A DNA stretch of 64,000 nucleotides from Selaginella moellendorffii (taxonomy: Eukaryota > Plantae > Lycopodiophyta), in NCBI RefSeq assembly GCF_000143415.4, contig NW_003314297.1, positions 186,001-250,000 of the forward strand. Direction: 5' to 3'. Under the pieces are notes generated by a model. It was given only the letters and a program-made list of their open reading frames with translations. It was not told where the DNA came from and ran no database searches. The translations under genes were made by a program, and so were the position numbers. Shown piece after piece: positions 29,734 through 54,760 of this stretch. Positions within the stretch are counted from its first letter, which is position 1; every line of letters starts with the position of its first letter.

Positions 29734-32700
29734 CTATTCCTGCCTCAAAGCTTGATCCGCGGTAGCAATAGGACTAGCGGCCCCGGCCCCGTCCGCAGTA
29801 GCTTCCCCATCCGAGGAGGCACCTTTCTCTTCCTCCGCCGCCACTAGCGCTTTCGAAGGCTCGCCATAGTTGTGGAGCCTCTTGCCAATGAGATACCTGT
29901 CATCCCTGATCGCGTTGTGGACGTCGAGAAACAATTGCCTCAGCTGCCTCAGCCCATACCAGCCAGTTAGCAGCATCAGCGACCCGGCCCACGCGAACCG
30001 ATAAACTGCCGAGTTGATGAGGATGGAGAGGCCCAGCGCTGGAAACAGTCCCCGAGCAGCGACGTATGGGATGCTGAGAGCCGTCAGGAGCTTCACCAGC
30101 ACCGGAGCTACAATCTCCTGGAAAACCCACCACCCCCGGAGCCGGGAGAATCCATCGGCTTTCACTTGCTCGAACTTTCGCCTCCAGCTCTCGTCCGTGA
30201 GGAGCGTCGCCTGGCCCGCCATTGCCTGTGGTATAGAACAAAGAGCGCAAAGGCATCAGTGGAGTGAGAAAGGAGACAGCACAAACAGCGTACCAGTCGA
30301 GTCCAGATTTTCAAGAGGACGAGTCCGAGAGCCCAGTCTTGATACAGCAAGAAGACGGGGCTTTCATCCACAGGCACTCGCAGTGGCACCACCACCAGAA
30401 GCTCAAACAGCAAACCAATAAGAACGGGAATGACAATCACCTGATCATCGACAAGTCATGAGAAGAAACAAGAACAATAGAAACAAAACTTACCCATAGC
30501 GAGAGGAGCACGACGCTCTTCGACACAATGGCTGACCACTTGAGAACTTGCATGAAAAGAACCCACATGTCATGCGTCCTCAAATAGTTTACTATGTAAC
30601 GGACCGCTGCAGCTGCCGCCCAGATGACGAAGCAGCCGATATTAAACGCATAGAGATCTGAAATAAAGAAATGTTAGATTTCTCATTTTACCGGAGCTGT
30701 GCGACATACCATTGCAGTTTGCACCCCTCGTGATTGGAAGGCGAGAGAACGAGGTGACAATGGCACGCCCAACGGAGACCGGAAGGACAATCAAGGACGA
30801 GTTGAAAACCAGCATCGTCAACCACGCCCCGAGCAGAAGCAAAACAATGCGCACCGCGAACTTGTACCTGGTAACAGCAGTTTATCGAAATGAATACTGC
30901 CAACGTAGATAACGAGAAATACTTACTCTCCAGTGTCTAATCTTTCCTCGTCGGCGTCGGTTTCGCCATTAGCAGCTGGTGGTGGTGCGGCTTGTTCAGC
31001 AACGGCATTTCCATTTCCTCTATTTGTGTCTTCTGGACGAGGAAGGAGGTACTCGTAAAGATCGAGAGCCTTGCCCACAACTGAAAACCAGTAGAATAGA
31101 ACAGCCTTGATGGTCGCTCTTGGGCGGAAGTGTTCGAGAGCGAACGGTATGCATATATGAAACAAGAGCATGTCGGCAGGGAGCTCAGTAAACGGATCCG
31201 ATACTCTGCAGAAGAATAGCGTTCAGTTGAAGATAGATCAAACTTATGATACAGCTTTACCTTATGTCCAGAGGAAAAACGGAAAAAGCTAAATGCGTGG
31301 CCACTTGAACCGGAACAAACACCAGTAAAACAATCAAGCTTCCATACACGACCACAGAGAGAAGTACTCTTCTAGCGTGCTTATGAAGCGGATCGTCAAT
31401 CAAGTCGCGGAAAGGATTGTAATTTGGATCCGCCGGGTCACGCAAGAAATATAGGACTCCAGGGCGGAGAACCTGAAACTTAAAACCATTAGCATGAACT
31501 AGAAAACCCGGAAAAAATAGCAACTCACCTCACGCAACAAGCTCACAAAAATGCTTATCTGTAGCATGTAAAATATGCCGACCAGCCAATGCAGAAGAGA
31601 GCTGGTAAGGGGTGAGGCCCAGAAGAATGCAACTCGCTGTGCAAAGGACACCTTTAGCATAGCCAAGGTGCAAACGTCGAGCCACCATCCGCAAACCAAA
31701 GGAAAGACGCCGAGCTCGATGACCAGAAGGAAAGCCACCTTGAGCATCGTCGCCACATACCTCACGCAACCGATAATATGTCGGAACAAAGAAGGGGCAG
31801 CTTCGGCTAGTGACACCACCCCGCGAATTCGTCCGACCATAAGTGGCTCACCCCTTCCATAGCGGACGAGAAGTATCAGGCCGAGATAGAAGCTCAGCAG
31901 AAGAAAGATGACTCCATAGCCGACCGCGACGGTTGCTGCGTCGGAGAGCTGGATCGCAGTTACGAACACCTCGGCCATAGCATCGTAAACCGCAACAGCC
32001 TTGGCCACAACCTCCACTGGTCCTTCTGAGCGAGCAGGAGCTTTGCCAAGATTTAATACCGAGAGAAAGATACGGCCGATGGTAAACGGAACAAACGCAA
32101 CTATTCCCAGGAAAATGGCATTGCTTGCTAGAACCTGAAGAAGAAGAAACAAAAGAAGTGTAAGCAAACGAGAGCTTGGACTAGAAGAAACAAACTTACA
32201 GTGACCGCATTCTCGATCAAATGGTGGATCGGTCCCTGCATTCCAACGAGCTCGTCGAAAGGAACATCCTCAGCACCATCTGGATCGTCGGCTTCAAACA
32301 TCTGTTCCACGTGAGCTTCTATCCGCGCTGCGACGTTCTCAGCGTTCCTCCTGATGATCTCGCCAGCTCCAGCGGCTAGTCCCTGTCCCTGCCCAGCACC
32401 GCCATCGCCGTTCGCGGGAGGAGCGTGCTGCTGCCTATCAGCCTCCTGGCCAGCCACCTCCCGGATGTGTCTAAAGTACTCTCGCAGCGACGTTGCTCCA
32501 AGAAATATAAAGACGATCCCGGCCGAGATGAGGAAGCCATTCAAGCAGTCGGCGAAGAGGAAGGCCGGCGTGAGGAAGCGGGTGACGAAGAGCTTCTGGG
32601 CATCACCGAGGCTTCTCACGAAAGTCATCCTCCAAATCCAGAAGGTGGTGAAAGGGATGAAGAGCAGCCACACCGACAAGACGAGCACGAGCCTAGAGAA

Positions 32701-33111
32701 GAATCGCAGGCCCCTCCCGGCCTTGGCGACCATGCCATAGACGAGCTCGGTCACTGGGAGGCGCGTTGGAGCGTCCTCGGCATAGACCGGGGAGAAAGAG
32801 AACTGGTGCTTGCAAACCTGTGAAGAACGCGATAAATCTTGTGACTTGGAAGAAATTTCTCTTCTTCTTCTAGGCTAGACACAAACCTCGCATTGCTTGG
32901 CATTGCTGTGATTGAGCCACTGCAACAGGCACTCTTGATGCACGTACTTGATGCTGCCGCTGCAAGCGCAAGGATAGTAGAGCGGCGATCCATCCTCGCC
33001 CGATGTCCTGCAAATCCGGCAGACATCCTCCTCATCCTCAGCCGCGGCGGCGCCAGCGCCGCGATTCTCAGCTTCAATCCGAGAAGCGCTGCTCTCGATC
33101 TCCATCTCCAT
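29734..33111 (-). CDS. SUD1: E3 ubiquitin ligase SUD1/CER9 (Doa10/MARCH6 family)
   Basis: RING-CH EEDVCRICRTSGEDGSPLYYPCACSGSIKYVHQECLLQWLNHSNAKQCEVC; EDVPFDELVGMQGP; LRPGVLYFLRDPADPNYNPFRDLIDDP; HNAIRDDRYLIGKRLHNYGE. ATG placed at 33111 (MEMEIESS). Confidence 0.95.
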
Positions 33112-35301: not shown

Positions 35302-35428
35302 TGAAGGTAACTTTCCTCCATCGCAGCCCGATCCTCAACCCGCGAGCTTTTTGATCGATGCTAGGCACTTGATTCCATGAAGATTTTGTGAACCCGCGAA
35401 AATTTGGTCGAATAAAATTGAAAGAATT

Positions 35429-35510
35429 CGTGAGCGACAGGATTGGAACCTGCGCGGGCAGAGCCCACATGATTTCGAGTCATGCCCGATAACCACTCTG
35501 GCACGCTCAC
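35429..35510 (-). tRNA. trnS-CGA: tRNA-Ser(CGA), variant T-loop and D-stem
   Basis: GTGAGCG acceptor stem, anticodon loop CT-CGA-AA, long variable arm. T-loop is TTCCAAT instead of TTCGAAT. 82 nt. Confidence 0.85.
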
Positions 35511-35573
35511 ATTTAAGGTGATTAGCACCGAATATTTCAAGAATCTATGCAGCGCCAAAGAAAGAAAAGTTTT

Positions 35574-35655
35574 CGTGAGCGGCAGGATTCGAACCTGCGC
35601 GGGCAGAGCCCACATGATTTCTAGCCATGCCCGATAACCACTCCGGCACGCTCAC
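35574..35655 (-). tRNA. trnS-AGA: tRNA-Ser(AGA)
   Basis: GTGAGCGTGCCGGAGTGGTTATCGGGCATGGCTAGAAATCATGTGGGCTCTGCCCGCGCAGGTTCGAATCCTGCCGCTCACG; canonical cloverleaf with long variable arm, 82 nt. Confidence 0.93.
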
Positions 35656-35849
35656 GTTACGCATACATTAAATTTGCTAATTAGCTATAGAAGATATAGC
35701 ATTTCTTCATGGAAATTCTTTCTTTTCTTCTTTCTTGCCGATCACCTAACCATCGCTGGAACGCAAGAGCGATGGATCGACCGAGGCGGTGAAGCGTCGG
35801 CGCCATTCCAGGAGCTTCTCTTCTCTCGATTCGTCATGGACGCGGATTC

Positions 35850-36000
35850 TGAGGTTCTCATTGACCGTTTTGCTCGACTGTAAGAAGTGATGCCAACAAT
35901 TGGCGGCAGCAAGAACAGAAGCTGTCGCCAGCAAGCTTGCAACAAGACCAGCTTTTGCAACGGACACGCTTTGCCGTTCCATTGCCTCCAATAGAGCCTT
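35850..36000 (-). pseudogene. MCM8: MCM8-like AAA+ exon fragment
   Basis: [33 protein letters not shown]...KTVNENLR matches the MCM8 segment [45 protein letters not shown] with a short deletion. The rest of the gene is absent. Confidence 0.7.
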
Positions 36001-36194
36001 GAAAAAAAAAGAATAAAGATGCACATAAGATGAACTCGGCCCCTGGATTGGCACCGGAAAAACTCCACCAGATCGCCAGAGAGCTTCGCTCTGCGATCTT
36101 CCGGATCGTAGCTCACTCCTGCGAAGTAGAGCCGTCAGTCGAGCTGCGAGATACATTTTCCAACAACAACGTATGCCACGTGGCAGGATATTAA

Positions 36195-38540
36195 ATGCTT
36201 ATGTTTAGGGCGTTACGTCATAGGGTTGCTTTTGTCAAAGGTTACATTGAAAGGAAAGCAAGCAAGGAAGAGGGGGAGAACAAGAGTAAGTCTGTGGAAG
36301 GTTCCATTAGTGACAGGGCTCTTTCTTTTGCTTTGACTTATCAGAGTTTTTTTTCCGTAGTGAAAGGTGCTGGCTGCTTTCCCACGAAAGCAAAAGCAGC
36401 AAAGATCGACGAGGCAAAGGCCGAGGGAGCTGCATCCTCAAGTCACATATGGGGAAAAACTAATCCACTGAAGTTTCCTGCTTATTTGTACACAAAGGGT
36501 GTGTTCAAGGCGAACCACCCTTTGATTAAGGTGGGCAAGCGGTAAACAAAGTTGGCTGCTTCATAATACTTGTTGTAATGCTTGTAGATTGTCAGCGGAG
36601 AGGAACTAATGCCGGCATTTGACAAGTTTGCGCTGCCGCTGCTGGTGGATGCGCAAGTCAGACGAGCGGCTATTTTCCTGTGCTCTACAGAATTTACTCG
36701 ATTCTATAAGTATGTTCTTTTCCTATGTTTCTCGTGAGTGCAGTAACCATCTTTTTTGGTTTCTTACCCAGACTTTACGGAAAGGCATCCAATGAAAAAC
36801 AACTAACAGAGTTCCACCATTCTTTGGTCAGAGAACTGGAGAAGCTCACAATACCATCGGGCCAGACACTGAAGAAACTTGAGGGAGATCAATTGCTGTA
36901 CGAGAGCCTAACGGGGAAAAAGAGGAAGCGTACAGATCTGTCGGACATTGCAAGCTTTTCAGACCAGCTGGACATGTTGTTGCAGGTGGCTGAGGAAAGA
37001 ATTTCACAGGATTTGAGATTTTGACCTTGATCCTGAGCATGCTCCAGTAATAGGAGAAGATGGTGAAGAATCGACGGGCGCTGCGGACCTCAAAGTGTAC
37101 GTGCTGGTGAACAAGCTGCAAGAAGTAAGCCATCTGAATTGCATGTATAATCATTCTGACGTATGTTTTGTTTGACTCTAGCTTGTGAAGAAGTTAGTTG
37201 CGATTATAGAGTTCAAGTTCACAAACGAAAAACAGGCAGGCTTCCAGGGCACCTGCTATGCTTGCAAAGAAGCTCCCATCAACATGCACAACTCCCAGAC
37301 GAATCCCATTTACGTACTCTGTTTCTCCGAGCGTTGGAAACGTTCCATCCTACATTTGCGGGGAGAAGTTTCTGTAAAGAATGGCACACTCGATCGCAGT
37401 TCCCTTCCAGGTACTTACTATACTGAGAAAGTTGTTTCCTAGCAATGTGTTTGTACAGCTTTTAGGAAGACCGAGAAGATGATGGGTTTCAAGGACCCAA
37501 TTCCTGAAGAGGAGCTTGTGGAAATGTTGCAGGAACGCACTGCTTTCTTCCAGCGGAAATATTCTCAAGCCCCACAGTCGCTCTACCCTGACAATATGTA
37601 CCTTGTTGGGACGCTTTACACCTCCGACGAGGTAAGTATTTTTGAAGTGTTAAATGATTGATTTAACTTACGCCTTTGGCATTCTGAGGAAGTGGCATGA
37701 ACTTCCTCGGAATGAGTTGTTTGGTGGTGGCAGTCCAGACACACACCGTCTCTATGAGGGACTTTTACGTATCATCATTGGAGATGCGGTGCTCAAATGG
37801 AGTAAGGAAATGCTTAACAAAGTTGTAGAAGCAAGGGAGTCAATACGTATGGAGGAGCGAGTTCTGCACACAGGTACCATGCATAAGATTTTCAAAAAAT
37901 TTATTGCCTTTGAAATTTGTGGTTTTACTTTTTAGGATTTATGGACAGATGAGAACCAGAAACAACACAACTTGAGACTGTAAAATTGAGAGTCGCATAT
38001 GTATACATGTGGAGGACAGAGCTATACTAACATGTTTCCTTACAACTAACTATGATTGCAGAGACTGGTGGTGACAATAGGATGAAAGCTTGAATTGATT
38101 GCTTCAAGTGGTTGAAAATTGCTTCGGAATTTTGGTCGACCAAAAGATAATACCAACGATTCCCTGAGGTCATCACACAGCACCATCCGCTTGTCTTCTT
38201 CTACCAATCTGATCGGGCATGCCGGCTGTGACCTGCCTGTGACGCCAATTTCATTTGGAGAGCAAGATGTCTAGTCAACGAGGCAATTCCTTCATGGGGC
38301 CAAAGAATGAGCTTGTTTGTCGCAGTTCATTGAGCAGAGCATGAATTTATATTCCAGTACGTTGAAACAAAGTTTAAATCAATTTGAAGAAATGCAGATC
38401 CTTAGATCCTTTTAAATACTATTTTAGGTTTCTTGTGCAAGGAGCGCCATAGTAAGATTCATCGAAGACGTCCATAACGTTGAGTTGGTGCCAAAAGGCT
38501 TCTATGAGATCGCCAGCTCAAAAGCACAACAAACGTATAG
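36195..38540 (+). CDS. Multi-exon lineage-specific gene or pseudogene with a possible PD-(D/E)xK nuclease-like motif
   Basis: Chain of GT-AG-bounded exon-like segments (36361-36530, 36588-36709, 36772-36985, 37054-37123, 37182-37410, 37459-37631). Peptide [30 protein letters not shown]. Start, stop and integrity uncertain. Confidence 0.4.
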
Positions 38541-39565
38541 GTATAATCCTTTGATTTTTTTTATGAGAGCTAACCTCGGCATAAAAACACTAGTTAATTA
38601 GCATGAACACGTTCATGACACAAACCACTCACATGAGCCTTGTGCTAGTAAAAGCACACGTTTGCATGGCTTTGAATTTCCAGAGGTTGTATCTCCTTTC
38701 TGATGAAAAAATGAGTGTTCATACCTTGTGCTCGTGAGTTTGTATTTGGAAAGCTCTCTCCTATAAGCTCCTCCCCAGTTCTTGTTCGCCTAGGTTGGGA
38801 GAAGATGATCTCTCCTAGAGCGGCGCCATCCAGAGCATCGAGGTGTCGGACCTGAGGGAGGTGGTCATCTTCGGCTTCCGGAGCTTCCACTGTGCAGCAA
38901 AGCTCATGACTTTGATCGTTTCTTCCAGGTTTTTTGCTTGAGGAAAGTGTCGCTATGGCAATGCATGCCGGTTTATGCACGGGGTGGTCCTTCTTGCAAC
39001 TCGAAAGCTGGCGGTGGTGGTTTCAGAACTTGCGTCTCCACCGGAACTGCGGTGACTGGGAAAGATTTGGCGAGTGGCGATGGTGGTCTTGGAGGTGTGT
39101 CCACGCCAAGCGCAGCTATCGTGAAGGATCTGAGTGGCAGCGCGGGCAAAGCCTCGATACATTACGATTAATAATGTGATATCCCATTATCTGTTGAAGA
39201 ATATGTCGTTTGCCAATTAAGTTTCTTCGTGGAAGTTTAGAGCACGGCAATGCTGATCGTTCTTCCGGCTTCGCTATGACAATCAGGCCGGTTTAAATGG
39301 AGCTCCAAAGTTTTCCGCGAGGAATGCTTCGCAGTGATTTCTACAGCTCTAGAAACAGTGTTTTCTTCTTCTCTAATATACCTTGCTGTTGCCAGGCCTT
39401 GGAATAGTCCAGCTCTGGAAAAGTCCGTTGTCCATGTTGACGTGTAACTCTTAACCAAAGAATCGTTCAGGCAGAGGTAATTTGCAGTTCTCAAATCGTT
39501 TCAATCGTTTTATTGATTCACGTTCTCCACACACAGGTGGTAATAACAAATCCACAGACGGTAAC

Positions 39566-41374
39566 TCAAGATGGCCGATAAGTGATGAGATTGGGAACCT
39601 TAATGTAAAGGTAGTCGCGGTACAAGCCTTGGAGCTTCATGGTGATAAACGCCTTCCAGTTGACAGTAGCACCAAGCCACAGGCTTCGGGCATGGCATCC
39701 GGGCGGTAGCATGGCATCCACCTCGGCTCTCACAAACTCCCAACCTTTGGCGTTGTAGTGGACGCTCAGCGCCCGTGCGAGACGATGGAGATGGCACTGG
39801 ATGATCGTGTGAAAGGCCAGGTTGTGAACTTCGTCGATTGTCTCAGCAAGCTGAGAGCAGTTCTCCGCATCCCACACGTCGAGCTCGAGGCCAGTGGTCT
39901 CGAACAGAGTTTGTTGGTGGGCTTTGATACCGCCCAAGTCGCGGACCGTGAAACCCACGAGCTCCCACTCTCCAGCGACAGCTGCGGGACGGAACCGTGC
40001 CAGAACGTTTTGGAGATGGGCCTCGAAACTCACTCCGTGTTTCAGCAGCGGTGGAAGGAATGCCCGGAGGAAGAGCCGGGCGTAGTTCTGGAAGAAGAGC
40101 TCCTTCTTCTCGAGGGAGTCGAGGTGGAACAGGGTGTTGACGACGAAGTCATCGCTCCTCGAGGGATATCGCTCAGTGAGAGCGGCAGATAGCACGACTC
40201 TCTCGCTTCGGGCTCGGGTGGTGGCCAGGTGCTGGGGGTCCTGCCGGATCACGCAGCTCAGGTTTTTGGCGACGTCGGGATCCGGGTGATTGGAAACAAC
40301 GCTGGCGAGCTCGTGAGCAACCTCGAGCAGGTCCTTGTCCTCGATGATCTTGTCAGCAACGGGTTTGAAAGCTGGGCCGATGTGAGTCGTCCACGGTGTG
40401 ATAGTCCGGGTGGCCGAGCTGATCTTCACACCGATTGGGAGCTTGAGATTGAAGGCGGGGAGCTCGTCCACGACCACTGTTCTCACTGAGGCTTGAGCTC
40501 GGGCTTTGCAAGTGAAAGGAAGGTGGCGAGCGTGAGGAAAGTGGAGCAGCACGCTCGGGACTTGGACGTGGTGGACAGGCATGACGAGCTCGTCGCAGGA
40601 ATCCATGAAAACGTTGGCCCTGGCGGAGGAGATCTGGACGAGAGGCGCTACAAGCTTCTCAAAGTCGCCACGGACAGTGAGCTTGGATCGTGGAACCGCG
40701 AAGAAATGGATCTTGGGGGCCGATAGGTCGTTGTTCCAGGGATCGATGGGCAAAGTTGGAGGGACGTGAAACCTCGACTTGTGCATGGGATGCGTTGCGT
40801 GGCCTTCAACAATGAGCTGCTCCCATTGCATCGAATCGGTGGTGTGCTCGAGTTCTGGCGGAGCTCGTCCCTGGTGGTGGCTGTAAGCGGCCGCCTGGTG
40901 TGACACCGAGTTCTCCATCTCTTGAGTGATCTGCTCCAGCAGCGCAGCGCTCAAGGCCGGGTCCCATTCTTGGAGCTGCGTGGTGACGGTCCGGACGTCT
41001 GCGGGCACGTACTCGACAGGTCGATCGACTTGCAACTGCTGGACGGGGAAGCCAATCTCGTCCGGGTCGAGCAAAGTTACTGGAAGAATCTCCGCGGGCT
41101 CGCCGCCGAGCTGTGGAGGCTTTTGGACCGGGGGAAGCTCTCGAAGTGGCACGAGAAAGCTACCGTGCTTGAGTAGCTCGAACTCTTCGGAGGCGGCGGA
41201 GATGCACATCCAGTGCTTGCGGTGCTTGGGAGGGACGGGAGCCGCGAGCCTGGCGGGGAGAGATTCGGCGTGGAGCACCAGGTACGCTTTCACGAACTTC
41301 TCATTGACGAGGCAGGCGAGCAAGCGCGCTAGTACCGCGTTCTTGGCCTCTGTCTGGAACTTGCTAACTTCCAT
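39566..41374 (-). CDS. IucA/IucC-family NRPS-independent siderophore (NIS) synthetase
   Basis: 602-aa intronless ORF with WEQLIVEGHATHPMHKSR, MPVHHVQ, AQASVRTV, LKLPIGVKISSATRTI, GVSFEAHLQNVLARF and VRDLGGI, the NIS synthetase motifs in their expected order. Confidence 0.92.
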   Translation of the reverse strand: MEVSKFQTEAKNAVLARLLACLVNEKFVKAYLVLHAESLPARLAAPVPPKHRKHWMCISAASEEFELLKHGSFLVPLRELPPVQKPPQLGGEPAEILPVTLLDPDEIGFPVQQLQVDRPVEYVPADVRTVTTQLQEWDPALSAALLEQITQEMENSVSHQAAAYSHHQGRAPPELEHTTDSMQWEQLIVEGHATHPMHKSRFHVPPTLPIDPWNNDLSAPKIHFFAVPRSKLTVRGDFEKLVAPLVQISSARANVFMDSCDELVMPVHHVQVPSVLLHFPHARHLPFTCKARAQASVRTVVVDELPAFNLKLPIGVKISSATRTITPWTTHIGPAFKPVADKIIEDKDLLEVAHELASVVSNHPDPDVAKNLSCVIRQDPQHLATTRARSERVVLSAALTERYPSRSDDFVVNTLFHLDSLEKKELFFQNYARLFLRAFLPPLLKHGVSFEAHLQNVLARFRPAAVAGEWELVGFTVRDLGGIKAHQQTLFETTGLELDVWDAENCSQLAETIDEVHNLAFHTIIQCHLHRLARALSVHYNAKGWEFVRAEVDAMLPPGCHARSLWLGATVNWKAFITMKLQGLYRDYLYIKVPNLITYRPS

Positions 41375-42109
41375 GCTTCCTTGATTTTCTTTTTCTTTCA
41401 GGAATGCGAGCTTTCAAAGAAAGGAGCTACGCGTGTGCTCGTTCCTGGAAAGCAAGCAAGCAAAGGAAACTCGTTACTCAACTGAGAACTACACTCGTAG
41501 GACGTGGCGTTTTTTCGCCTGGTGCTAGAGGAATCGCGGAAAAGGACGCGAGGCCGAGAAGAGATATGGAGAGAGCACAAGTTTGTTTCGGCAATAAAGA
41601 GCGCCATCGCTTATGTACTGCGCGCATGATTGGAGGCGTGGAACGAGTCCATGCCAAGGATGTGGTGTGTGACGCATCGGGCACGAGTTCTCTCGAGCAG
41701 GACATACTTTGGGGAGGGAGAAGACATGATTTGCGATGAATCACAGAGTTATGGCGATGATCTTGTGGTCGCGCTAGAAGTTGTAAAGAGATACGAGAAG
41801 ATAGATTATGAGGTACAAGAGAAAGGGTCATTGATACGGTGCAATTGGACAAACATCCCTGAGAATGCGGGAGTTAGTAACTGGGGCAAGAGATGCGTAC
41901 ACCAGGCACGAGCTTGTCTCGAGCGGGGTGTACTCGGGGTAGTGGGTCGGTTCGTATTATATATATTTGGAGATATGCAGCGAAGATTGGATTTTCAGTA
42001 TATATTAGAATATGGCCTTTTTGTTTTTCTTGATTATAATTTCCAAACATTTGTTTTAAAACTCCAGAATTTTTGTGTAAATCAATTCGGCTTTCCAGAT
42101 TTTAATATG

Positions 42110-42260
42110 CTTGCAATATATAAAAAATATGTTAAATATTCTGGGATATTTTACCATTTAACAGTTATTTAAATTAATTTTGTGTTTATAATTTATAAAC
42201 TTTTCTAAACACTTTTTAGTGTATTCTAATTTAAACACTATTATAATTATAAACTTCCAT
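42110..42260 (+). repeat. Dispersed AT-rich repeat, copy 1
   Basis: ttaaatattctgggatattttaccatttaacag..tttataatttataaacttttctaaacactttttagtgtattc is the diverged reverse complement of ~54645-54760. A partial copy lies at ~47950-48050. Confidence 0.7.
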
Positions 42261-42557
42261 TTGATATTAAGTAAACCAAACATGATGTCAATAGATCTAT
42301 AAACTATGTATCTAATTCAGATTAGCATTGTTATTTTGATTTACTACAAATGCAAAGCTATAAACACTCATCCAGTAAAGGCAAATGCGATTTTCTTCTT
42401 GCCAATACACAAAACACAAGGATGCATTTCTTTTATTATGTGATCGCCACAGAGACCGGCAATCCCGTGCGTAAGAAAAAAAAATTGGCTCACCTGATCC
42501 CTGGGCCGCGTGGTCATATACTTTGGAGTTGGAGTGTTCCAAACAAGAGTTCTGTGG

Positions 42558-45500
42558 CTACGCTGCTGCCGTGACCTTGTGCTGCTCCTGGTGGTGCTCG
42601 GCCAGCATCCCCTTGAGGCTCTTGGTGAGCCAGATCGCCGTCTCCCTGGGCGACACCGCACCGCCACCAAAAGGCTTGAGGACGATGGCCAGCTCCTCCA
42701 GCCTGTGCTGCGCTAGCAGCTGGGCCGAAAGCTCCAGCAAGCCCTCCAGAGCATCCGCCCTTTGTCTGTAAGACTTCAAGTCCGTCCCATCCATCGCACC
42801 CCTGTCCTGCTGCTCGCTCCCGGACGCTACCTCTGTTGCTGTCACAGTAGCACTCAAACTCGAAGGACCACCACCACAACCGCCACCTTGGTGTTGACAT
42901 TGTTGCTGGCTTTGCTGCTGCTGCTGGGAGATTGGCAGCACCTCCACGTCGGGCTTGAGATCGAGCAGCGACGCGATGTCCATGTCCCGCGGAAGTTCGC
43001 TGTGCGTCGGGTGGTGTTGCTGCGGCTCGGCCTTGTCACCGCCACCGCCGAGCCTAAACGTGCTGTGCCGGATGACATGAACCACGTCGTTGAAGACCGG
43101 GCCCGAGCTGCCTGGCATCTGGACTTTCTCGTTGCTTATCTGGATGGCTATCTTGTCCTTGGATCCACCACCGCTCCCGTGATAGCGATCGCCACTTGTG
43201 TGGAAGTCGCCAGACTTTGCGTGGCTGCTGCGAGGCTCTGGCAGCCTGCTCTTGGAGAAGTACCTGTCCGCGTACTTTGCAAAGTCGTGGGCCTCGCACA
43301 GCGACTCGTCAGGCGTCAAGTTGAACTGCGGGATCTTGTCCAGCCTGGGAGCGTTCACTGAGACGTCAGGTGATCGGAGGTCCTTCAATCCGGCCAGGTG
43401 CGCCGACTTCTTGTTGGACGGCCGGACCAGAGGCCGCAGCAGCGATAGCACGTCGTCTTTAAACTCCTGGTCCCGTCCGAGAGACTTGACTGGGCTCGGA
43501 TGTATCCGCGACTGTAGAGATGACTTCACCGTGGTGCGAACGAAGGCTGGATCCTCTGGCCGAGAAATTCGTCCAGCCGGGTTAGTTGTTGGTGTGTAAG
43601 GCTTTGGTGTCTCGTGTACCGCCGGCACGGCATTCCGGGAAGTATACTTGCCACCACCAGCTGCGGGCATCGAGGACCTTCGTGCAGTTGAAAGTGGTGT
43701 TGTGGGGACGGTCGGCTTAGACTTAGCTCCAGTTGATCGTTCCACCACAAGCGGAGACACCAGCTCTGCTTTGATTTTATTTCTTGAAGGAGGCTCCCCA
43801 CCCTGCAGACGCTTGAAAAGTTTAGAACCATTCAGAATTGTAAGCACGAACACTTACAGAATACTTCTTTCGTGGAGGAGCTTCCCTTGCTAACGGCGTC
43901 CGAGGACTTGGGACTACCGACTTTACACGGCTAGTTCGAACCGGCGAGCTTTTGATTGGATACTTGTCTTGTTCAGCACCAGAATCCACTTGCGTTTCAC
44001 TTCCGTCCGTCAAGTTTTCTTCGAAGTGCCTTTTAGCTAGTCGATGCTTCAGCCACTCAAAATTCGTTAGACCTGCGTTTCTTCCCAGTGTCTTTGATAG
44101 AGACTCTGATGACGTCTCGGAATTCTCCTTCTCACTGGTATCGACATTCCAAATGTGACTTGCAGTTCTGCTAGTGGGAGCAGCTGATTGCACGTCGTCG
44201 TGCTCAAATCGTTTATTGTCGACATCGCCACTAGAGTCCGTGGCGTTCATTGAATAGCTGCTATCGCCACTAAGGTCCAGGCTGTGCGCCATGAGAAGAG
44301 CTCCACCAACTTGCCTTCTACGCTGGAGTAGATATGGTTGCAAATGCGGGTGTCTCAGTAGTTCTGCGGCCTACAAAATGTTTCAACCAGGTCAGGTTAG
44401 CGACAAAGGTACAAGTCAAACAGATTACCGTCGGACGATGCTCCGGATTTTTTCGAAGCATACTCCGTATCAAGGATTTACTAGAGAACACAGTGCAGTC
44501 GAAGCAAAAAGTTAGCAAACGAGCAGAACAGGAGAAGACACTCAATGCTGCACTCACAATGAGCTAGAGTAGCACGTTGGCAGTGGGCCGATCGAAGACT
44601 TGTTGATTTTATTGATCAGTCCTTGGATATCCTGGTCAGACAAAACATGAAAAACGGTTTCTGCAGAGCAGGAAGTAAAAAACTCACGAAGGCTTTAAAT
44701 GCTGGCCTATGTGCGCTCATCTCATACATGCAACATCCTGCACACATAACGCTTAAAATTAGAACCAGCTCAGAACCATTATTTACTTCTACCTAGAGAC
44801 CAGATATCTGACTTGAAACCATATGGGATATCAGCTAAAAGCTCAGGACACATGTAGTTCGGTGTCCCTACGACCTGTATAACAGCTTTAAGCAGAAGAA
44901 ATACGACCGCAGGATGGTATTTACCGAGCACGCAAGGTCATCCGACTTGAGCATTTTGGCGAGTCCAAAGTCACCTACCAAGTTTTCCACATTGTAGTGA
45001 GAAACACAACGAATGTTCCAATCACTTGGCGTACCTAATCGAATGTCATGATCCTTCGTTAAAAATATGTTGGAGCACTGAAATGGAGAACAGCTGTTGA
45101 GCATATCACGGGAGCACTGACAAACACGTCTACCTTAACATCCCGATGGAGAATGTGGTTTGCATGTAGGTACTCAACGCCCAAGAGGAGTTGGACGAAC
45201 CATCTGCAAAGCCTCTGTGGCAAACAGCAGAAACATTAAAACCAAAAGAAACAATGAAAACAATCCACTGACCTCCTCCGGGAAGTAAGTTCCGTTAGCT
45301 TTACGGATGATGTCCGCCCTGCGAAACATACAAGAGGCGAATCATAAGAACTCGAAGTGTTTGTTATGAACAAAACAAATGCGTACATGTCCCCTCCCTC
45401 ACAGTATCCTGTGACGATGCATACATAGCATCCCTGCAGACTTGTATAAGAACAAAACTACGCATAAAACAAGAATACCAAACCTTCTCCACCCACGCTT

Positions 45501-45857
45501 CCTTGTATTCGACAATGTGAGGGTGCTTCACCCGAGAAACAAGAGCCATCTAGAAACCAAAAACACGTTATGCGAAATTCTCCTCAAATTGCTCGAAGTA
45601 CCTCTTGGTGAGCAGAACGCCTGCATCTATCACTCTGGCGAGCAAGTCTTATTTTCTTCAAGACATACCTGCGACAAGCGGAAACGAAAAAAAGAAAAAA
45701 GCAAAAAAAAAAAACATGAGAAGGAACAAGGAACATCAAAACACAATGCGCCTTACTTCTTCTTCTCAAGTTTGTGATTGACGAGAATGGCTGAGCCAAA
45801 CGCGCCCTTCCCAACTTGCCCAATGATCTCATACTGCTCCATTCTCGACGAGTCCAT
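42558..45857 (-). CDS. NEK6: NIMA-related Ser/Thr kinase (plant NEK6-like)
   Basis: [26 protein letters not shown]; [22 protein letters not shown]; [17 protein letters not shown]; [24 protein letters not shown]; plant NEK C-terminal motif [34 protein letters not shown]. Confidence 0.93.
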
Positions 45858-48800
45858 TGAGGAAACGCGTCGTTCCTGCGCCCCTTCTCACATATGGACG
45901 ATGGACCGTGAGGCAATTTCCTAGCTTTGCTTTCCTAGCTGCAACTGGCACAGCAGACATATCCACGCAATCAGATTCTGACGGTGAGGAATCGTACTGG
46001 GAAAAACGGAAAAGAAAAATGTACCTTGTGGAAGCAGCAGTGATGAGAAGAATTCATCCACCCAGTAACGGTGTGTCGCCCTTCAATCAATCACAATGTA
46101 GCTTCGGCACCGACGAGTTAAAGGCAAGGAAAAGGGATGGGGCAGAAACATATGGTCCGATCGCCTGCGCCCAACACAAGCAACGCAAGGGAGCAATCTT
46201 TTATGCTCTACCAGTAAAGAATTTAAATATGGGGAGAAAATTTCTCACCTGGATTTGTGTCACTGACCGAGGAGATCGAGAAAACACCGCAGTAGAAGCA
46301 TTTAAAATCTCCTCTCGTCAAAGAAAAGATGCCGCTGCCAGAAAGGACGAGGAGAAAAACTTTTGGCCCCCTGCGACTACTGTAATATTTCGGCAATGCC
46401 GCCGCAAAAGCACCTCACCAGCCGCTAGAATCGAGATTTCCCGGAAGAAAACTACGCAATCAGCACTAAGAACAGTGGATTCCCCGGCCAAGAACACGGA
46501 TTAAACCCGAAGATCGGACGCGGCCGTCGCGGCGCCAGGCGTGCCACGACGCGGATGGAGCTCGCGCCTACGATCGATCGATGACTCACCCGCGACTACT
46601 CTCGCTAAAACCCTGTTCTTCCCTCTCTTCTTTCACGATTAACCCCAATGTCCGGTCGAGGGGGTTTAAATTAAAGGTAAATTTCAAAAAGCGTACGTTT
46701 ACCCTTTACCGGTACCGGCGACGTGAAATTTGAACCAAGTGTGAAAATGAGATTTGGCGCAAAATTGGGCAAGGGAGCATGACCCATGATAAGACATGAC
46801 AGTTGAGCTGTATGTGGGCCATGAGAAAACAAAGCAAAGAACCAACTTAAATGAGTCATGGGTCATGCAGCGTGGTGGCGTCGTCGGTTCGATCCTTTTG
46901 ACTTGCTCTACGTCAGTTCTTAATTGTTGAAAGCTCTTGTATAAACTAATTGTATTTGTATTGGTTTGCTGAGACGAGCCAGAAGTTGTCGAGTGGACAA
47001 GTTAGCAGCTGGGAGAAAAAAAATTCCTTGGAGAGAAAGGGAGCATCAATCTATAAAGAAAAACTTAGCAAACACTGAAAAACAAAGTGGCAATAAACAT
47101 ATCCAGTCAGTTGCACACTTTGGTTTCGTGAGTTGGTGCTCTATGAAGCTCCACATATGAGATAAGGACCTGAGGCCGGGTTGAAAGAAATGATTCTGGA
47201 AGCCAGTGAATGCAATCTCTTAAGCACCCACTAAGAAAGAAATAAGATATGCTTGCAATCGTGGTAAGAAAAGTTTGGAGTAAAATCAAACAAGAAAAGT
47301 TCTACCTAAAAAGATACATTTGTTGTTTATCACCTATAGGTAAAGAATATACCTAGAATATTTAAGTCACTTTACAGGAGTAAGATTGGAATAATCATCT
47401 TCCCTAAGAGGTTACTGGCAAATCATGTTAATCTTCTAAAGAATTTCTATTAATTGTTGTGCTTTTAAATTCAAATTCTAAATGAATGCTAAATCAAGCT
47501 TTTTCCAATGCTACACACAGAAAAAAAGAACTATGCTCAAAACCTAATCTAGAAAGACATTCATCAAGAGTGTGTAAAAACCAGTTGCAACAAATTATGA
47601 TTTTAATTATATATCCCACCATCCAAATACATGCTCACCACAAAAACACATTAACCAACTTTTGGAGTGTTCCACATTCTTTATAAGATGGCTGAGTGTC
47701 TTATGGCTTGAATATGCTTCTAGCAATAAGATTCTTTGCTAAAAGAAATTCCATAATCTTTAACTTTTGATTGATAGAGATTCTTGCTAAAAGATTTAGT
47801 GAATGGTAAGCTTACAGTTAGAAGCCTCTAGTGGAATTAAAAGGTTAGGAAGATCCATATCCATGTTAAGGGTTTCAACTTTAATTTAATTGATATAACT
47901 AGTCTTTTTTAAAATATTATTTTGTAAAGCTAAAAAAATTCTTTTTGGTTATAAACATTCTTAAACACCTTTAGGTAAATTCTAGCATATTTTATTATCT
48001 AAAGTAGAATGCATTTAGATTAATCTTTTGTTTTTAAATTATACATATCTTAGCAGCAAAGCCTCACTCCTAGTTTCATCCAGCTTGACACCTCCACTGT
48101 CACAAAATGGCCCCTAAGTTTTTGAAAGTCATGACAAAGTTATAGATATCATAAAATTTATCACCACCATCACAACATCACTTATAAATCCTTATAGAAT
48201 TCTATGCCTCATTTTCAAGTGTGGTTAGAGCTGTTTAAACGTTTTGGCTATCCCAAAATCCATGATCTTGAGCAAGAGGTTGAGAAGAGCCAATAGTATT
48301 AGGATGATACTTAGCTTTATTGAGTGAGTGCAAGCACTTCAAGCCTTGAGAGATCTAAAGTTATATTGACATAAACTAAGGCTAAGAAAGGTCACACAAA
48401 GCTTTCTTCTTGTACTTGAGATTGCTAGATTAATACTTGAGGCTATTGTCTCTTGACATGAGGATGTTGGAGCTATGTGTAGAGCTATTCATTTTATAAG
48501 AGCTTAAAGCATATCTCTATTTGAAGGCTTCAACTTCCTGGATGTATCCCCTACATCTCAAAAGTCAAGTACTTCATCTTTTAATTGAATGAAAGTGTTG
48601 GGAATGTGATTTTGGGTATTGGAAGTTATCTACTAGTCAGTCCTTACGAACACTCTTTTGCTTACTATCATGACGGCAGGAGGTTGGTATTGCTTATTCT
48701 TTTTATTAACCCCTCTTGTTAAAATGTTAGTAAACTAGGTTTAGCACTTATATTTAGCCAGATAAATATAAGGTAGGAACTTCTATGTATTTCTAGCTAA

Positions 48801-49999
48801 TTATACTTGGCTTGGCTCTTAGTTCTGTTTTTGCTTTATCTTGCACTAGTTTGAAAAGAACCCTTGCATATTGAGACTAATCTTTCAATATCGGATAGTT
48901 TATTGTGTTTGCCAAACACCTATGTTATTATGCCTTTTATGTTAGTCTCATTTCGGTCCCAAATATTATTTATAGAAAGTGTTTAGATTTGCTCATTTGG
49001 CATATTTATAGAATGTAAAGATTATTCTAAATATAATGGTGTTCATCCCATGTCCAAATTTGCAATCTAAAGACATTCCATATTTAATAAGTTTTGAACT
49101 TGTCCTAGAGATTAACTCCCAATACTAAAGGAGGCTTGGGGTTGGGGGGGGGGGGGGCATGGCAATATAGGGGGTTCCAAATGTATAGTTGAGATAGTGG
49201 ATAGGTTAGGCATAGCTGACCAACTTGAGACATGGTCTAACTCTCGCTTGCGTGCCTGTTTTTGTTCTGCATCTAGCTTAAGTCTAAGCTTAAGTTCCAC
49301 ACCATGCTAGCTAGTGGAGTACCTATATCCTTGTGTTAGGCCACTGGTATACAGAAATAGCGCAAAACTCCATTTAACTCTGTTTTGCGTGTTGGTCCTA
49401 GTATTGGGATGTTAGATGCTTTAAGATTATTCTAAGTTGCTCTGTGCTCCTATCCTTTCGCTCCTTAGGCTATACATTTGGAAGTTAATCCATGCTTTAA
49501 TACTATTGCTCCTTGGCTCCATACTTGAGAGTTTGGCACCATTTTTTCATTCAGTGGCTCAAGGTCTTGAAACTCAGGTTCTACACTATTGTCCTTGGGA
49601 TATATAGCATATAACATGTGGCACATGAAGGATTAAAGTTCTGCTTCATGGTTATTCTATGGTAAATCACCATAAAATAAAGGGTAAAAACCACATACAC
49701 TACAAAAAGCTACATTAATATCTTGGATGCAACTATGGGTTTATTGCTTGAAGTTGGTATTGCAAAACATTTATCTTATTGAAAATTTTCCCAACTTTGC
49801 AAGCTTGTTGTAGGTAGAGTTATGCAAGAGCTTATGGAGTGATGTTTCAGTTTTTGGTTTTGATCCCTATAAAAAGCAAAAATAATGGTTTTCTTCTCTA
49901 ATAGATGAATGGTAAAACTTAACAAACCCATTATCTTGATATAAAATTTTTGCCTTTGATGTTGTTGAGACACAATTTATCTACTTATTTACACAATGA

Positions 50000-54180: not shown

Positions 54181-54574
54181 TTATTTTTCTGTCTTTTAAA
54201 GCAATAAGGATATTGACTTTTTAAAGTTTCAAAATTAGCAGCTATGGATATAAGAGCACTATTATATTAAATGATTTTTTATTATAAAGTGAAATTATAA
54301 AAATCATGAAAGTTTAGGAGGTTTATTAGATATTTCTTGATGTGTATAATTCTCACTCTTGTAAATAATATTTTTAAAATGTTTATACACATTTATTATC
54401 ATTAAATTTCAATCAAAACATAAAAAAGAAAACTTATAATGTAATATGTTTAATTTACTATCTATGATAAAAAAAATTATTTCTACACATTGCATGTAGC
54501 AATGCTTGGTTTTCTTAATAGTAGTTTTATTTTTACTTATTAATTCATTTGATCAAATAAAATTTATAATAATA

Positions 54575-54760
54575 TGTATGTTTGTAATTTATAAACACAA
54601 GATTAATCTTATTTCATATCAACCATTAGATGATAGAATCAAAAAGAATATACTAGAAAGGGTTTAAGAAAGTTTATAAATTATAAATACAAGATTAATT
54701 TAAATCTGTTAGATGGTAGAATATCCTAGAATATTTAAATATATTCTAAGTATATCCACT
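54575..54760 (-). repeat. Dispersed AT-rich repeat, inverted copy
   Basis: Reverse complement aligns with 42110-42260 and 47950-48050. Confidence 0.7.

What the first reader, a model, noticed from the sequence alone, without database searches (positions are those of the whole stretch)
39566..41374. Stand-alone, intronless NRPS-independent siderophore synthetase (IucA/IucC) inside a plant chromosome
Seen: an intact 602-aa GC-rich ORF without introns, between spliced plant genes and nuclear tRNAs, which argues against a contaminant contig. It keeps EGHxxHP, PVH, QASVRT, KLP..ISS..RT, EAHLQN and RDLGG. Established: NIS synthetases adenylate citrate or related acids and couple them to amines; they are bacterial/fungal, whereas plants normally rely on reduction or nicotianamine-derived chelators. 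I recall a fungus-to-Selaginella transfer of an iucA/iucC gene being proposed in earlier phylogenomic work, so the gene itself may be known, but I know of no characterised product. Inference: no amine hydroxylase, acyltransferase or transporter is nearby, which fits a rhizoferrin-type single-enzyme route (citrate plus putrescine) and a horizontally acquired, microbe-style iron-uptake system in a vascular plant.
Basis: partly seen in the sequence, partly recalled or inferred. Interest (0 to 1): 0.85.

Follow-up and report, generated by a model that had tools for sequence, protein, structure and literature searches.

The report
Fungal-type siderophore synthetase gene in Selaginella
A spikemoss chromosome carries an intact, switchable, intron-free gene for a fungus-type iron-chelator synthetase; its fungal origin was proposed in 2009, and here it proves to be shared with ferns and still looks catalytically competent.

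Summary

It is a resident Selaginella moellendorffii nuclear gene (SELMODRAFT_407912 and its allele). Both haplotype scaffolds of the public assembly carry it in the same synteny between spliced plant genes. Its codon-position GC matches the neighbouring exons.

RNA-seq shows an unspliced minus-strand transcript of about 2.1 kb from both alleles. It reads 44-78x in one sample and under 1x in another sample of the same study, while the neighbouring kinase is equal in both.

The AlphaFold model (pLDDT 93) superposes on AcsD at Z 33.8. The catalytic His/His/Arg and the ATP/Mg residues are all kept.

In the trees, plants form one clade (99/98): Selaginella plus Adiantum and one unidentified fern-like transcript. 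That clade nests among early-diverging fungi (100/99; AU p = 0.019). The wider family holds the Rhizopus NIS protein presumed to be the rhizoferrin synthetase Rfs.

The fungus-to-plant transfer of an iucA/iucC gene was already published (Richards 2009, seen only through a review). I found no report of the fern copies, the older acquisition they imply, the conditional expression or the selection evidence. A rhizoferrin-type product is plausible but untested.

The parts
39566..41374 (-). Coding sequence of the NIS synthetase, 602 aa, with no intron
   Evidence: ORF list. It is identical to the gene on GL377601.1 of the public S. moellendorffii assembly. No splice joints appear in the RNA reads.
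39484..41617 (-). Main transcript as assembled from RNA-seq, 2134 nt, with a 5' leader of about 243 nt and a 3' UTR of about 82 nt
   Evidence: Contig record 2 of run X1 spans 39484-41617. Stranded reads of X20 give 44-78x over 39576-41545, falling to about 10x in 41546-41742 and about 4x in 39379-39575.
40175..40831 (-). IucA_IucC domain (aa 182-400), holding the EGHATHP, PVH, QASVRT and KLP..ISSATRT motifs
   Evidence: Pfam PF04183 at 1.1e-25; motif coordinates.
39725..40099 (-). FhuF-like C-terminal domain of NIS synthetases (aa 426-550), holding the EAHLQN and RDLGG motifs
   Evidence: Pfam PF06276 at 3.1e-11; motif coordinates.
40799..40801 (-). Codon of His192, equivalent to the catalytic His170 of AcsD
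   Evidence: Profile alignment to AcsD 2W02. The role is from bioRxiv 10.1101/2025.11.03.685623. His in 65 of 72 homologues.
40406..40408 (-). Codon of Arg323, equivalent to the catalytic Arg305 of AcsD
   Evidence: Arg in 70 of 72 homologues.
40016..40018 (-). Codon of His453, equivalent to the catalytic His444 of AcsD, within EAHLQN
   Evidence: His in 71 of 72 homologues.
39509..39514 (-). AATAAA poly(A) signal, 52-57 nt past the stop codon and about 25 nt before the transcript end
   Evidence: Sequence; transcript 3' end at about 39484.
41398..41607 (-). Upstream ORF of 69 codons in the 5' leader, ending 24 nt before the main ATG; a possible translational control element
   Evidence: Script on the leader sequence. 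The leader is covered by the transcript contig up to 41617. Function not tested.
42558..45857 (-). Context: upstream neighbour, a spliced protein kinase gene (838 aa)
   Evidence: Gene calls with Pfam Pkinase on both haplotype scaffolds, mapped to the window by offset. RNA depth of 40-82x and the 55-nt intron at 43801/43857.
29734..33111 (-). Context: downstream RINGv/MARCHF6-type E3 ligase gene (966 aa)
   Evidence: Gene call; MARCHF6_C match of ORF 29734-30222.
35428..35656 (-). Context: two nuclear tRNA-Ser genes (CGA and AGA anticodons)
   Evidence: ARAGORN.

Best explanation
This is a functional nuclear gene of Selaginella moellendorffii that encodes a stand-alone NRPS-independent siderophore (NIS) synthetase. 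It belongs to the fungal family that holds the Rhizopus NIS protein, presumed to be the rhizoferrin synthetase Rfs (type A').

Shown here: the gene is in the plant chromosome on both haplotypes. It is transcribed without splicing from its own promoter and from both alleles, and its expression is switched strongly between samples. It is more conserved than its flanks. It keeps the whole three-domain NIS fold and every catalytic and ATP/Mg residue. Its closest relatives are fern genes and, beyond them, genes of early-diverging fungi.

Inferred: the gene entered the plant lineage once from a fungus. The donor carried the paralogue now found in Entomophthoromycotina and Calcarisporiella. The transfer probably predates the lycophyte-fern split, and the gene was later lost in most descendants.

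Inferred mechanism: like AcsD and Rfs, the enzyme adenylates a carboxyl group of citrate with ATP/Mg and passes the citryl group to an amine. The amine is most simply putrescine or another plant di- or polyamine. The product would be a rhizoferrin-type polycarboxylate metal chelator made by this one enzyme from two abundant primary metabolites.

The confidence of 0.6 is for the whole statement. I put about 0.9 on a resident, expressed, intact NIS synthetase of fungal affinity, about 0.6 on a single ancient acquisition, and about 0.45 on a citrate-polyamine product.
For: Residence:
- The identical CDS lies on GL377601.1 and a 99 % allele on GL377572.1.
- Both sit between the same kinase, NEMP and MARCHF6 genes.
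- RNA reads show both alleles at about 50:50 at the 15 sites that differ between the haplotype CDSs.
- GC3 of 0.72 equals that of neighbouring exons.

Expression:
- Stranded RNA-seq run X20 gives 44-78x on the gene strand and X19 gives 0.7x or less. The adjacent kinase is equal in both.
- There are no joints inside the gene.
- A 2134-nt transcript contig was assembled.

Selection:
- The haplotypes differ at 8 synonymous and 7 nonsynonymous sites, so pN/pS is 0.28 (binomial p = 0.013).
- The CDS is 99.2 % identical against about 96.5 % for the flanks.

Enzyme:
- Both Pfam domains are present.
- The AlphaFold model has pLDDT 93.3 and pTM 0.94.
- The best structural match is AcsD with ATP, at Z 33.8 and 3.1 A over 525 residues. 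SbnC, AsbB and IucA score about Z 30.6.
- The profile hits AsbB at 5e-43 and AcsD at 8e-25.
- His192, His453 and Arg323 correspond to AcsD His170, His444 and Arg305.
- Arg298, Lys311, Arg377, Arg478 and Asp479 are invariant in 72 homologues.
- Two of AcsD's four citrate-pocket residues are kept: Lys563 as Lys574 and Arg576 as Arg586.

Family and function:
- The protein is 33 % identical over its full length (E 3e-103) to the Rhizopus delemar NIS protein.
- Rfs alone makes rhizoferrin from citrate and diamines (PMC7857480 and PMC10700112).
- By the title of Thieken and Winkelmann 1992, rhizoferrin is a siderophore of both Mucorales and Entomophthorales.

Phylogeny:
- Plants form one clade at 99/98.
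- Plants plus Massospora, Entomophthora, Neoconidiobolus and one Calcarisporiella paralogue group at 100/99.
- The AU test rejects plants lying outside all other members (delta lnL 29.2, p = 0.019).
Against: - No product, activity or iron response was shown.
- The run conditions are coded, so what switches the gene on is unknown.
- The plant clade sits in a different subclade from the Mucorales Rfs, at only 33 % identity.
- Two AcsD citrate-pocket positions differ (Tyr504 becomes His522, Asn565 becomes Phe576), so substrates could differ.
- The only NCBIfam hit, FslA, is far below its cutoff (49 bits against 1000).
- With the smaller taxon set the AU test did not reject a sister position (p = 0.085). 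The tested grouping was also chosen after seeing a tree.
- No exporter or uptake gene is linked.
- P0201 was taken to be Rfs from its species and family, not from a matching accession.
- The Richards 2009 paper could not be read directly.
Confidence: 0.6

Rival explanations
1. It is the same enzyme family but not an iron-uptake siderophore. The product would be an internal metal chelator or carrier, for example a stand-in for nicotianamine, which lycophytes are reported to lack. Alternatively it could be a defence or stress metabolite, or it could be built from a different acid or amine, such as the norspermidine that Selaginella produces.
For: No export or uptake gene is linked. Two citrate-pocket positions differ from AcsD. 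Expression is on or off between samples of one study, which fits many kinds of regulation. NAS transcripts are reported absent from lycophytes while YSL transporters are present (bioRxiv 10.64898/2026.08.27.747422). A Selaginella polyamine oxidase makes norspermidine (PMC11531321). Intracellular roles have also been suggested for rhizoferrin in Mucor (PMC9226013).
Against: Every characterised member of the NIS family makes a siderophore or a siderophore precursor. The nearest characterised fungal enzyme makes a secreted siderophore. Nothing here shows where the product ends up.
Confidence: 0.3
2. The shared plant clade does not reflect one ancient acquisition. Ferns and Selaginella would have acquired the gene separately from closely related fungi, or one plant lineage would have passed it to the other.
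For: Distribution is very patchy. Among plants only Selaginella, two Adiantum species and one unidentified transcript were found in two searches of 5.8 billion proteins and one exhaustive search of cluster representatives. Ferns are known recipients of plant-to-plant transfers (my own knowledge). Adiantum carries several diverged copies.
Against: Plant monophyly is 99-100/98. Selaginella is sister to all the fern sequences, as in the species tree, and both stems are long (0.5 and 0.34), which fits old divergence. Composition is fully adapted to the host.
Confidence: 0.2
3. It is a transcribed relic. The ORF would be intact by chance or recently inactivated, with no function in the plant.
For: Only 15 differences between the haplotypes are available for the selection test, so its power is low. 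One Adiantum nelumboides copy is split between two reading frames.
Against: A 1.8-kb ORF has stayed open in both alleles and in ferns despite deep divergence. All catalytic residues are kept. pN/pS is 0.28 and the CDS is more conserved than its flanks. Expression is regulated and strand-specific, with a defined transcript.
Confidence: 0.04
4. It is contamination or a misassembly, that is, fungal DNA joined to a plant scaffold.
For: Its closest non-plant relatives are fungi.
Against: Two independent haplotype scaffolds of 3.9 and 1.75 Mb share the synteny. RNA reads are heterozygous at the positions that differ between those haplotypes. GC3 is plant-like. The protein is only 33-47 % identical to any fungal protein. 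A homologue lies on a 150-Mb fern chromosome.
Confidence: 0.01
5. The gene descends vertically from an ancient eukaryotic gene, with losses everywhere except in fungi, lycophytes and ferns.
For: With the smaller data set a sister position of plants to all fungal sequences was not rejected (p = 0.085). A nucleariid, Lithocolla, has the family, so it is old within Holomycota.
Against: No alga, bryophyte or seed plant sequence was found. The plants nest inside a fungal subclade at 100/99, and the AU test with wider sampling rejects the alternative (p = 0.019).
Confidence: 0.03

Closest known systems
Rfs, the rhizoferrin synthetase of Rhizopus delemar (type A' NIS synthetase; Carroll et al. 2017, as cited in PMC7857480 and PMC10700112)
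   Same: It has the same two-domain architecture and a similar length. It belongs to the same fungal family, which separates at 100/100 from other bacterial NIS enzymes. It aligns over the full length at 33 % identity and 52 % similarity, and it is a stand-alone gene. Rfs alone makes rhizoferrin from citrate and putrescine.
   Different: The plant clade lies in another subclade, with Entomophthoromycotina and Calcarisporiella rather than Mucorales. The plant gene has no introns, whereas rfs has 6 exons. The host is a vascular plant, and the product is unknown.
AcsD, the achromobactin synthetase of Pectobacterium chrysanthemi (type A; PDB 2W02, 2W03, 2X3J)
   Same: It is the best structural match (Z 33.8, 3.1 A over 525 residues). 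The catalytic His/His/Arg and the ATP/Mg residues are conserved. Two of the four polar residues of the small citrate pocket are kept, the Lys and the Arg.
   Different: Identity is only 18 %. The Tyr504 and Asn565 equivalents are His and Phe. AcsD works within a multi-enzyme pathway with L-serine as nucleophile (my own knowledge).
AsbB, the petrobactin synthetase of Bacillus anthracis (PDB 3TO3)
   Same: It is the best sequence-profile match among solved structures (5e-43 over residues 113-583) and a polyamine-citrate condensing enzyme.
   Different: It is a distant relative (15-17 % identity in the structural alignments), a type C enzyme that acts within a six-gene operon (my own knowledge).
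The fungus-to-plant transfer of an iucA/iucC siderophore gene reported by Richards et al. 2009 (Plant Cell 21:1897)
   Same: It concerns the same gene family and the same direction of transfer.
   Different: The original paper could not be read here. I found no report of the fern homologues, plant monophyly, the donor paralogue, the expression pattern or the active-site analysis.
Nicotianamine synthase (NAS), the plant route to metal chelators
   Same: It is also a single enzyme that builds a polycarboxylate or amine metal chelator from primary metabolites. A 2026 preprint also proposes that plants acquired it from fungi.
   Different: The fold and chemistry are unrelated. NAS is reported absent from lycophytes, whereas this gene is present there.

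Membership tests
NIS synthetase superfamily (IucA/IucC) | IucA_IucC domain above Pfam's gathering score | tested here: met
   91 bits against a cutoff of 25, E 1.1e-25.
NIS synthetase superfamily (IucA/IucC) | C-terminal FhuF-like domain following the IucA_IucC domain | tested here: met
   44.4 bits against a cutoff of 25.2, at aa 426-550.
NIS synthetase superfamily (IucA/IucC) | Full-length three-domain fold of the solved NIS synthetases | tested here: met
   The model has pLDDT 93.3. All 22 top entries are NIS synthetases at Z 26-34, covering residues 1-600. The next fold family scores Z 12.5.
NIS synthetase superfamily (IucA/IucC) | Catalytic His/His/Arg plus the ATP- and Mg-binding residues | tested here: met
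   His192, His453 and Arg323 are present, as are Ser296, Arg298, Thr299, Lys311, Arg377, Glu451, Gln455, Asn456, Arg478 and Asp479.
NIS synthetase superfamily (IucA/IucC) | ATP-dependent acyl-adenylate formation and amide or ester bond synthesis | not testable with these tools
   Needs recombinant protein.
Fungal Rfs-like (type A') rhizoferrin synthetases | Groups with Rfs and its fungal orthologues rather than with other NIS types | tested here: met
   Plants plus all fungal sequences, including the Rhizopus delemar protein P0201, form a clade at 99-100 against the bacterial outgroups. The plants sit in a different subclade from the Mucorales. Reference sequences of types A, B and C were not in the tree; their distance was judged from PDB profile scores only.
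Fungal Rfs-like (type A') rhizoferrin synthetases | A single enzyme suffices, with no linked decarboxylase, hydroxylase or acyltransferase | tested here: met
   Genes called within 10 kb on either side are a kinase, NEMP, a RING ligase and products without a Pfam family. Unlinked partners cannot be excluded.
Fungal Rfs-like (type A') rhizoferrin synthetases | Product is N1,N4-dicitrylputrescine (rhizoferrin) | not testable with these tools
   Needs LC-MS of a heterologous host or of plant material.
Bacterial FslA/LbtA rhizoferrin synthetases (NCBIfam NF041038) | Score above the curated cutoff of the FslA model | tested here: not met
   48.9 bits against a cutoff of 1000. The Rhizopus protein scores the same (47.6 bits), so this shows only that neither belongs to the bacterial FslA lineage.
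Aerobactin synthetases IucA/IucC (the name UniRef gives the protein) | Close similarity to IucA or IucC, and the partner genes iucB and iucD | tested here: not met
   No hit by single-sequence search of PDB. The family profile gives only 77-78 bits to IucA and IucC over part of the length. No iucB- or iucD-like gene is called nearby. The database name is a domain label, not a function.
FhuF ferric-siderophore reductases | Stand-alone FhuF fold with the C-terminal cysteine cluster for a 2Fe-2S centre | tested here: not met
   E. coli FhuF (7QP5) matches only residues 330-600, at Z 12.5. The C-terminal 45 residues hold a single cysteine (translation). The cluster motif itself is from my own knowledge.
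Horizontally acquired plant nuclear gene of fungal origin | Physically integrated in the host genome | tested here: met
   Two haplotype scaffolds, shared synteny, heterozygous RNA reads and host-like GC3.
Horizontally acquired plant nuclear gene of fungal origin | Nested within the donor group with support, and absent from most of the recipient's relatives | tested here: met
   100/99 for the clade with Entomophthoromycotina and Calcarisporiella, and AU p = 0.019; the smaller set gave p = 0.085. Only lycophyte and fern sequences were found among plants. The two word-indexed searches have limited sensitivity.

The most novel reading that the evidence does not exclude
Lycophytes, and some ferns, would make their own rhizoferrin-type citrate-polyamine chelator with a single enzyme taken from an early-diverging fungus before the two plant lineages split. 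This would be a chelation-based route for metal acquisition or transport in vascular plants that is independent of nicotianamine. In Selaginella it could be the missing ligand for YSL-type transporters, since lycophytes are reported to have YSLs but no NAS.
Probability: 0.3. Interest if true: 0.8.

Novelty: already known. Interest (0 to 1): 0.5.

Why it matters
Plant iron nutrition is usually described as either reduction-based or dependent on nicotianamine-derived chelators.

This is a regulated, selectively maintained, catalytically intact siderophore synthetase in a vascular plant. It needs only citrate and a polyamine, so it is a concrete and cheap candidate for a third, chelator-based route. 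One heterologous expression with a CAS assay and LC-MS would test it.

It also bears on a question raised in a 2026 preprint: which ligands did YSL transporters use before plants had NAS?

The gene and its fungal origin are not new.
- **Older and wider than Selaginella.** Ferns share the gene and form one plant clade with it.
- **Narrower donor.** The donor lineage is narrowed to one fungal paralogue group.
- **Live and switchable.** The gene is transcribed and strongly regulated rather than a fossil.

Tried and rejected
- **Single-sequence PDB search:** it found nothing at E 0.01. A 72-sequence profile was needed.
- **Richards et al. 2009:** reading it by DOI and by PMC id failed because it is not held. 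A review was used instead, and it names the family and direction but not the species.
- **Literature on the Selaginella or fern gene:** searches with iucA terms gave nothing useful. The iucA-plus-fern search was swamped by author names.
- **Source of P0002:** a search for run SRR17638753 found no paper, so the fern-like sequence P0002 remains unidentified.
- **Further plant carriers:** a second protein search with a plant alignment found none.
- **Earlier notes of this scan:** nothing on siderophores.
- **GC-richness as a foreign signature:** rejected, because GC3 equals that of neighbouring exons.
- **Iron-response promoter elements:** there is no CACGTG box in the 940 bp upstream of the transcript start. 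I give this no weight either way.
- **First AU test:** with 49 rows it was inconclusive (p = 0.085). Only the wider sampling reached p = 0.019.
Full report
**1. The observation**

The window holds an uninterrupted ORF at 39566-41374 on the minus strand. It has 602 codons and an ATG start, with A at -3 and G at +4. An AATAAA signal lies at 39509-39514, just past the stop.

Pfam finds IucA_IucC (aa 182-400, 91 bits) and the FhuF-like C-terminal domain (aa 426-550, 44 bits). Both are well above the curated cutoffs.

Two tRNA-Ser genes lie about 4 kb downstream.

**2. Is it really in the plant genome?**

The protein is identical to one gene of the public Selaginella moellendorffii assembly, on scaffold GL377601.1 (1.75 Mb). 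It is 99 % identical to SELMODRAFT_407912 on GL377572.1 (3.9 Mb). These two scaffolds are the two haplotypes.

Both carry the gene between the same neighbours:
- an 838-aa protein kinase upstream
- an unnamed gene, a NEMP-family gene and a RINGv/MARCHF6 E3 ligase downstream

RNA reads laid on window 38000-43900 show alternative bases at about half the depth at the sites where the two haplotype CDSs differ. So the sequenced plants are heterozygous for exactly these two alleles.

The gene's GC3 is 0.716, against 0.674 and 0.712 for the neighbouring kinase and MARCHF6 exons. The GC-rich look is therefore coding against intergenic composition, not a foreign signature. Contamination or misassembly can be set aside.

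**3. Is it alive?**

- **Transcription.** In stranded RNA-seq run X20 the gene is covered at 44-78x from 39576 to 41545. The orientation is the one expected for a minus-strand RNA, the same as for the minus-strand kinase next door.
- **Regulation.** In run X19 of the same study the depth is 0.7x or less, while the kinase is equal in both runs (40-54x against 45-82x). Expression is therefore strongly conditional. The run records are coded, so the condition is unknown.
- **Splicing.** No joint falls within the gene, whereas the kinase's 55-nt intron (43801/43857) is detected in all four runs.
- **Transcript.** A 2134-nt contig spans 39484-41617. That gives a 5' leader of about 243 nt and a 3' UTR of about 82 nt.
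- **Selection.** The haplotypes differ at 15 CDS positions, 8 synonymous and 7 nonsynonymous. pN/pS is 0.28, with a one-sided binomial p of 0.013. The CDS is 99.2 % identical, against about 96.5 % for the surrounding DNA.

The selection test has low power. It agrees, however, with the deep conservation described in sections 4 and 5.

**4. What the protein is**

An AlphaFold model built on 72 homologues is very confident (pLDDT 93.3, pTM 0.94). It superposes over its whole length on every solved NIS synthetase:
- AcsD with ATP: Z 33.8, 3.1 A over 525 residues
- SbnC, AsbB and IucA: Z about 30.6
- DfoC, DesD, AlcC, NcdF and IucC: Z 26-28
- the next unrelated fold family: Z 12.5

By sequence profile the best solved relatives are AsbB (5e-43) and AcsD (8e-25).

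A recent preprint names His170, His444 and Arg305 as AcsD's catalytic residues. It names Tyr504, Lys563, Asn565 and Arg576 as the small polar pocket that fits citrate. Using the profile alignment to AcsD:
- The catalytic residues correspond to His192, His453 and Arg323.
- The pocket residues correspond to His522, Lys574, Phe576 and Arg586.
- The catalytic three are conserved in 65 to 71 of 72 homologues.
- Arg298, Lys311, Arg377, Arg478 and Asp479 are invariant. By my recollection of the AcsD structure papers these are the ATP and Mg ligands.

The enzyme therefore looks fully competent for adenylation. It keeps the two cationic pocket residues that suit a small polycarboxylate such as citrate. 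The other two pocket positions differ, so the pocket is not identical to AcsD's.

**5. Relatives and origin**

The searches were two runs against 5.8 billion proteins and one exhaustive HMMER run against 1.84 billion cluster representatives. The only plant relatives found were:
- **Adiantum capillus-veneris.** The gene lies on a 150-Mb chromosome.
- **Adiantum nelumboides.** There is one full copy and two fragments.
- **P0002.** This is an unidentified transcript-like contig from SRR17638753, 62 % identical to the Adiantum protein.

The A. capillus-veneris gene is a single 707-codon ORF, collinear with the Selaginella protein to its last residues. The deposited 672-aa model has a spurious 3' intron. 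Like the Selaginella gene, it is intronless.

All other close relatives (33-47 % identity) are fungi, with one exception. The fungi are Entomophthoromycotina, Kickxellomycotina, Zoopagomycotina, Mucoromycota and some Basidiomycota. The exception is the Burkholderia-related endosymbionts of Mucoromycota fungi, Mycoavidus and Glomeribacter, at 33-37 %. Every other bacterium found is at 22-28 %.

Maximum-likelihood trees (LG+C20+F+G4, PMSF) were built with 49 and with 60 sequences. They agree on four points:
- Plants form one clade (100/98 and 99/98).
- Selaginella is sister to the three fern sequences (100/100).
- The plant clade lies inside a group with Massospora, Entomophthora, Neoconidiobolus and one of three Calcarisporiella paralogues (96/99 and 100/99).
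- The whole fungal-plus-plant-plus-endobacterial family separates at 99-100 from the other bacteria.

An AU test asked whether a tree with all non-plant members held as one clade is acceptable. With 49 rows it was not rejected (p = 0.085). With 60 rows it was rejected (delta lnL 29.2, p = 0.019). The grouping was chosen after a tree had been seen, so the test is somewhat liberal.

My reading is one transfer from a fungus that carried this paralogue. It most simply predates the lycophyte-fern split, with loss in seed plants and many other lineages. Separate acquisitions, or a plant-to-plant transfer, are not excluded.

**6. Function**

The family includes the Rhizopus delemar NIS protein P0201. 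It is 33 % identical and 52 % similar over the full length (E 3e-103). I take P0201 to be Rfs from its species and family, not from a matching accession.

From the literature:
- Rfs alone makes rhizoferrin (N1,N4-dicitrylputrescine) from citrate and putrescine, and it accepts other diamines (PMC7857480).
- Rfs is classed as type A' together with FslA, LbtA, SfaB and SfaD (PMC10700112).
- By the title of Thieken and Winkelmann 1992, rhizoferrin is a siderophore of both Mucorales and Entomophthorales. That spans the two fungal groups that bracket the plant clade.

Among NCBIfam models, both the plant and the Rhizopus proteins hit only FslA, at the same weak score.

No hydroxylase, acyltransferase, decarboxylase or transporter domain is called within 10 kb. 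This fits a one-enzyme route from two abundant plant metabolites.

I rate a citrate-plus-polyamine product as likely. I put rhizoferrin itself, acting as a secreted iron-uptake siderophore, at roughly 30 %. An internal chelator role is a serious rival, because a 2026 preprint reports that lycophytes have YSL transporters but no NAS transcripts.

**7. Novelty**

The gene is annotated in GenBank. A review citing Richards et al. 2009 lists a fungus-to-plant transfer of a gene with iucA and iucC domains. The original paper could not be read. The core finding is therefore already known.

I found no report of the following, all established here:
- the fern homologues and the single plant clade
- the narrowed donor group
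- the endobacterial and rotifer relatives
- the intron-free, allele-balanced, strongly conditional transcript
- the active-site analysis

**8. Limits**

- No biochemical, metabolite or iron-response evidence was available.
- The sequencing-run metadata are coded.
- The plant survey is limited to what the protein databases hold.
- Reference enzymes of NIS types A, B and C were not included in the trees.

Noticed in passing
window 38817-38855: A 39-nt island is covered at very high depth by plus-strand RNA (18-58x in the raw runs; contigs of depth 183 and 868). Every read carries G>A at 38840 and runs on into unrelated sequence on both sides. This looks like a short captured piece of a highly expressed gene located elsewhere. 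The flanking read consensus translates to something like a type II peroxiredoxin, which is my guess and was not tested.
   Followed up: partly
window 41398-41607 (-): A 69-codon upstream ORF lies in the 5' leader of the NIS transcript and ends 24 nt before the main ATG. It could be a translational control element.
   Followed up: partly
window 35746-36156 (-): An ORF fragment with an MCM P-loop match (1.1e-12) lies antisense to an annotated 438-aa gene that has no Pfam family.
   Followed up: no
L002:10001-12713 (Adiantum capillus-veneris CM043963.1): The deposited gene model (672 aa, GOP47_0022807) seems to have a spurious 3' intron. The locus holds one uninterrupted 707-codon ORF, collinear with the Selaginella protein to its C-terminus.
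   Followed up: yes
L031:7947-10015 (Adiantum nelumboides): The full-length A. nelumboides copy is split between two reading frames, so it has a small intron, a frameshift or an assembly error. It is only about 72 % identical to the A. capillus-veneris copy over its C-terminal part and about 47 % over its N-terminal part. Two further fragments lie on other contigs, so ferns carry several diverged copies.
   Followed up: partly
L005-L008 (Mycoavidus cysteinexigens) and P0171 (Glomeribacter): Bacterial endosymbionts of Mucoromycota fungi carry a fungal-type NIS synthetase. It nests inside the fungal family as sister to Ramicandelaber (100/95). No other bacterium found comes close. This suggests gene exchange between fungi and their endobacteria.
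   Followed up: partly
P0281 (Adineta steineri), P0059 (Lithocolla globosa): A bdelloid rotifer and a nucleariid amoeba also hold members of this family, and both branch near its base. The rotifer copy may be another transfer into an animal.
   Followed up: partly
window 42530: One extra G is present in about 40 % of RNA reads and in one contig, near the 3' end of the kinase transcript. It is probably an allelic indel in the UTR.
   Followed up: no
window 22001-25000 and 47001-55000: Long AT-rich blocks (GC 0.22-0.36) interrupt a window that is otherwise at 0.45-0.59 GC. They were not examined.
   Followed up: no
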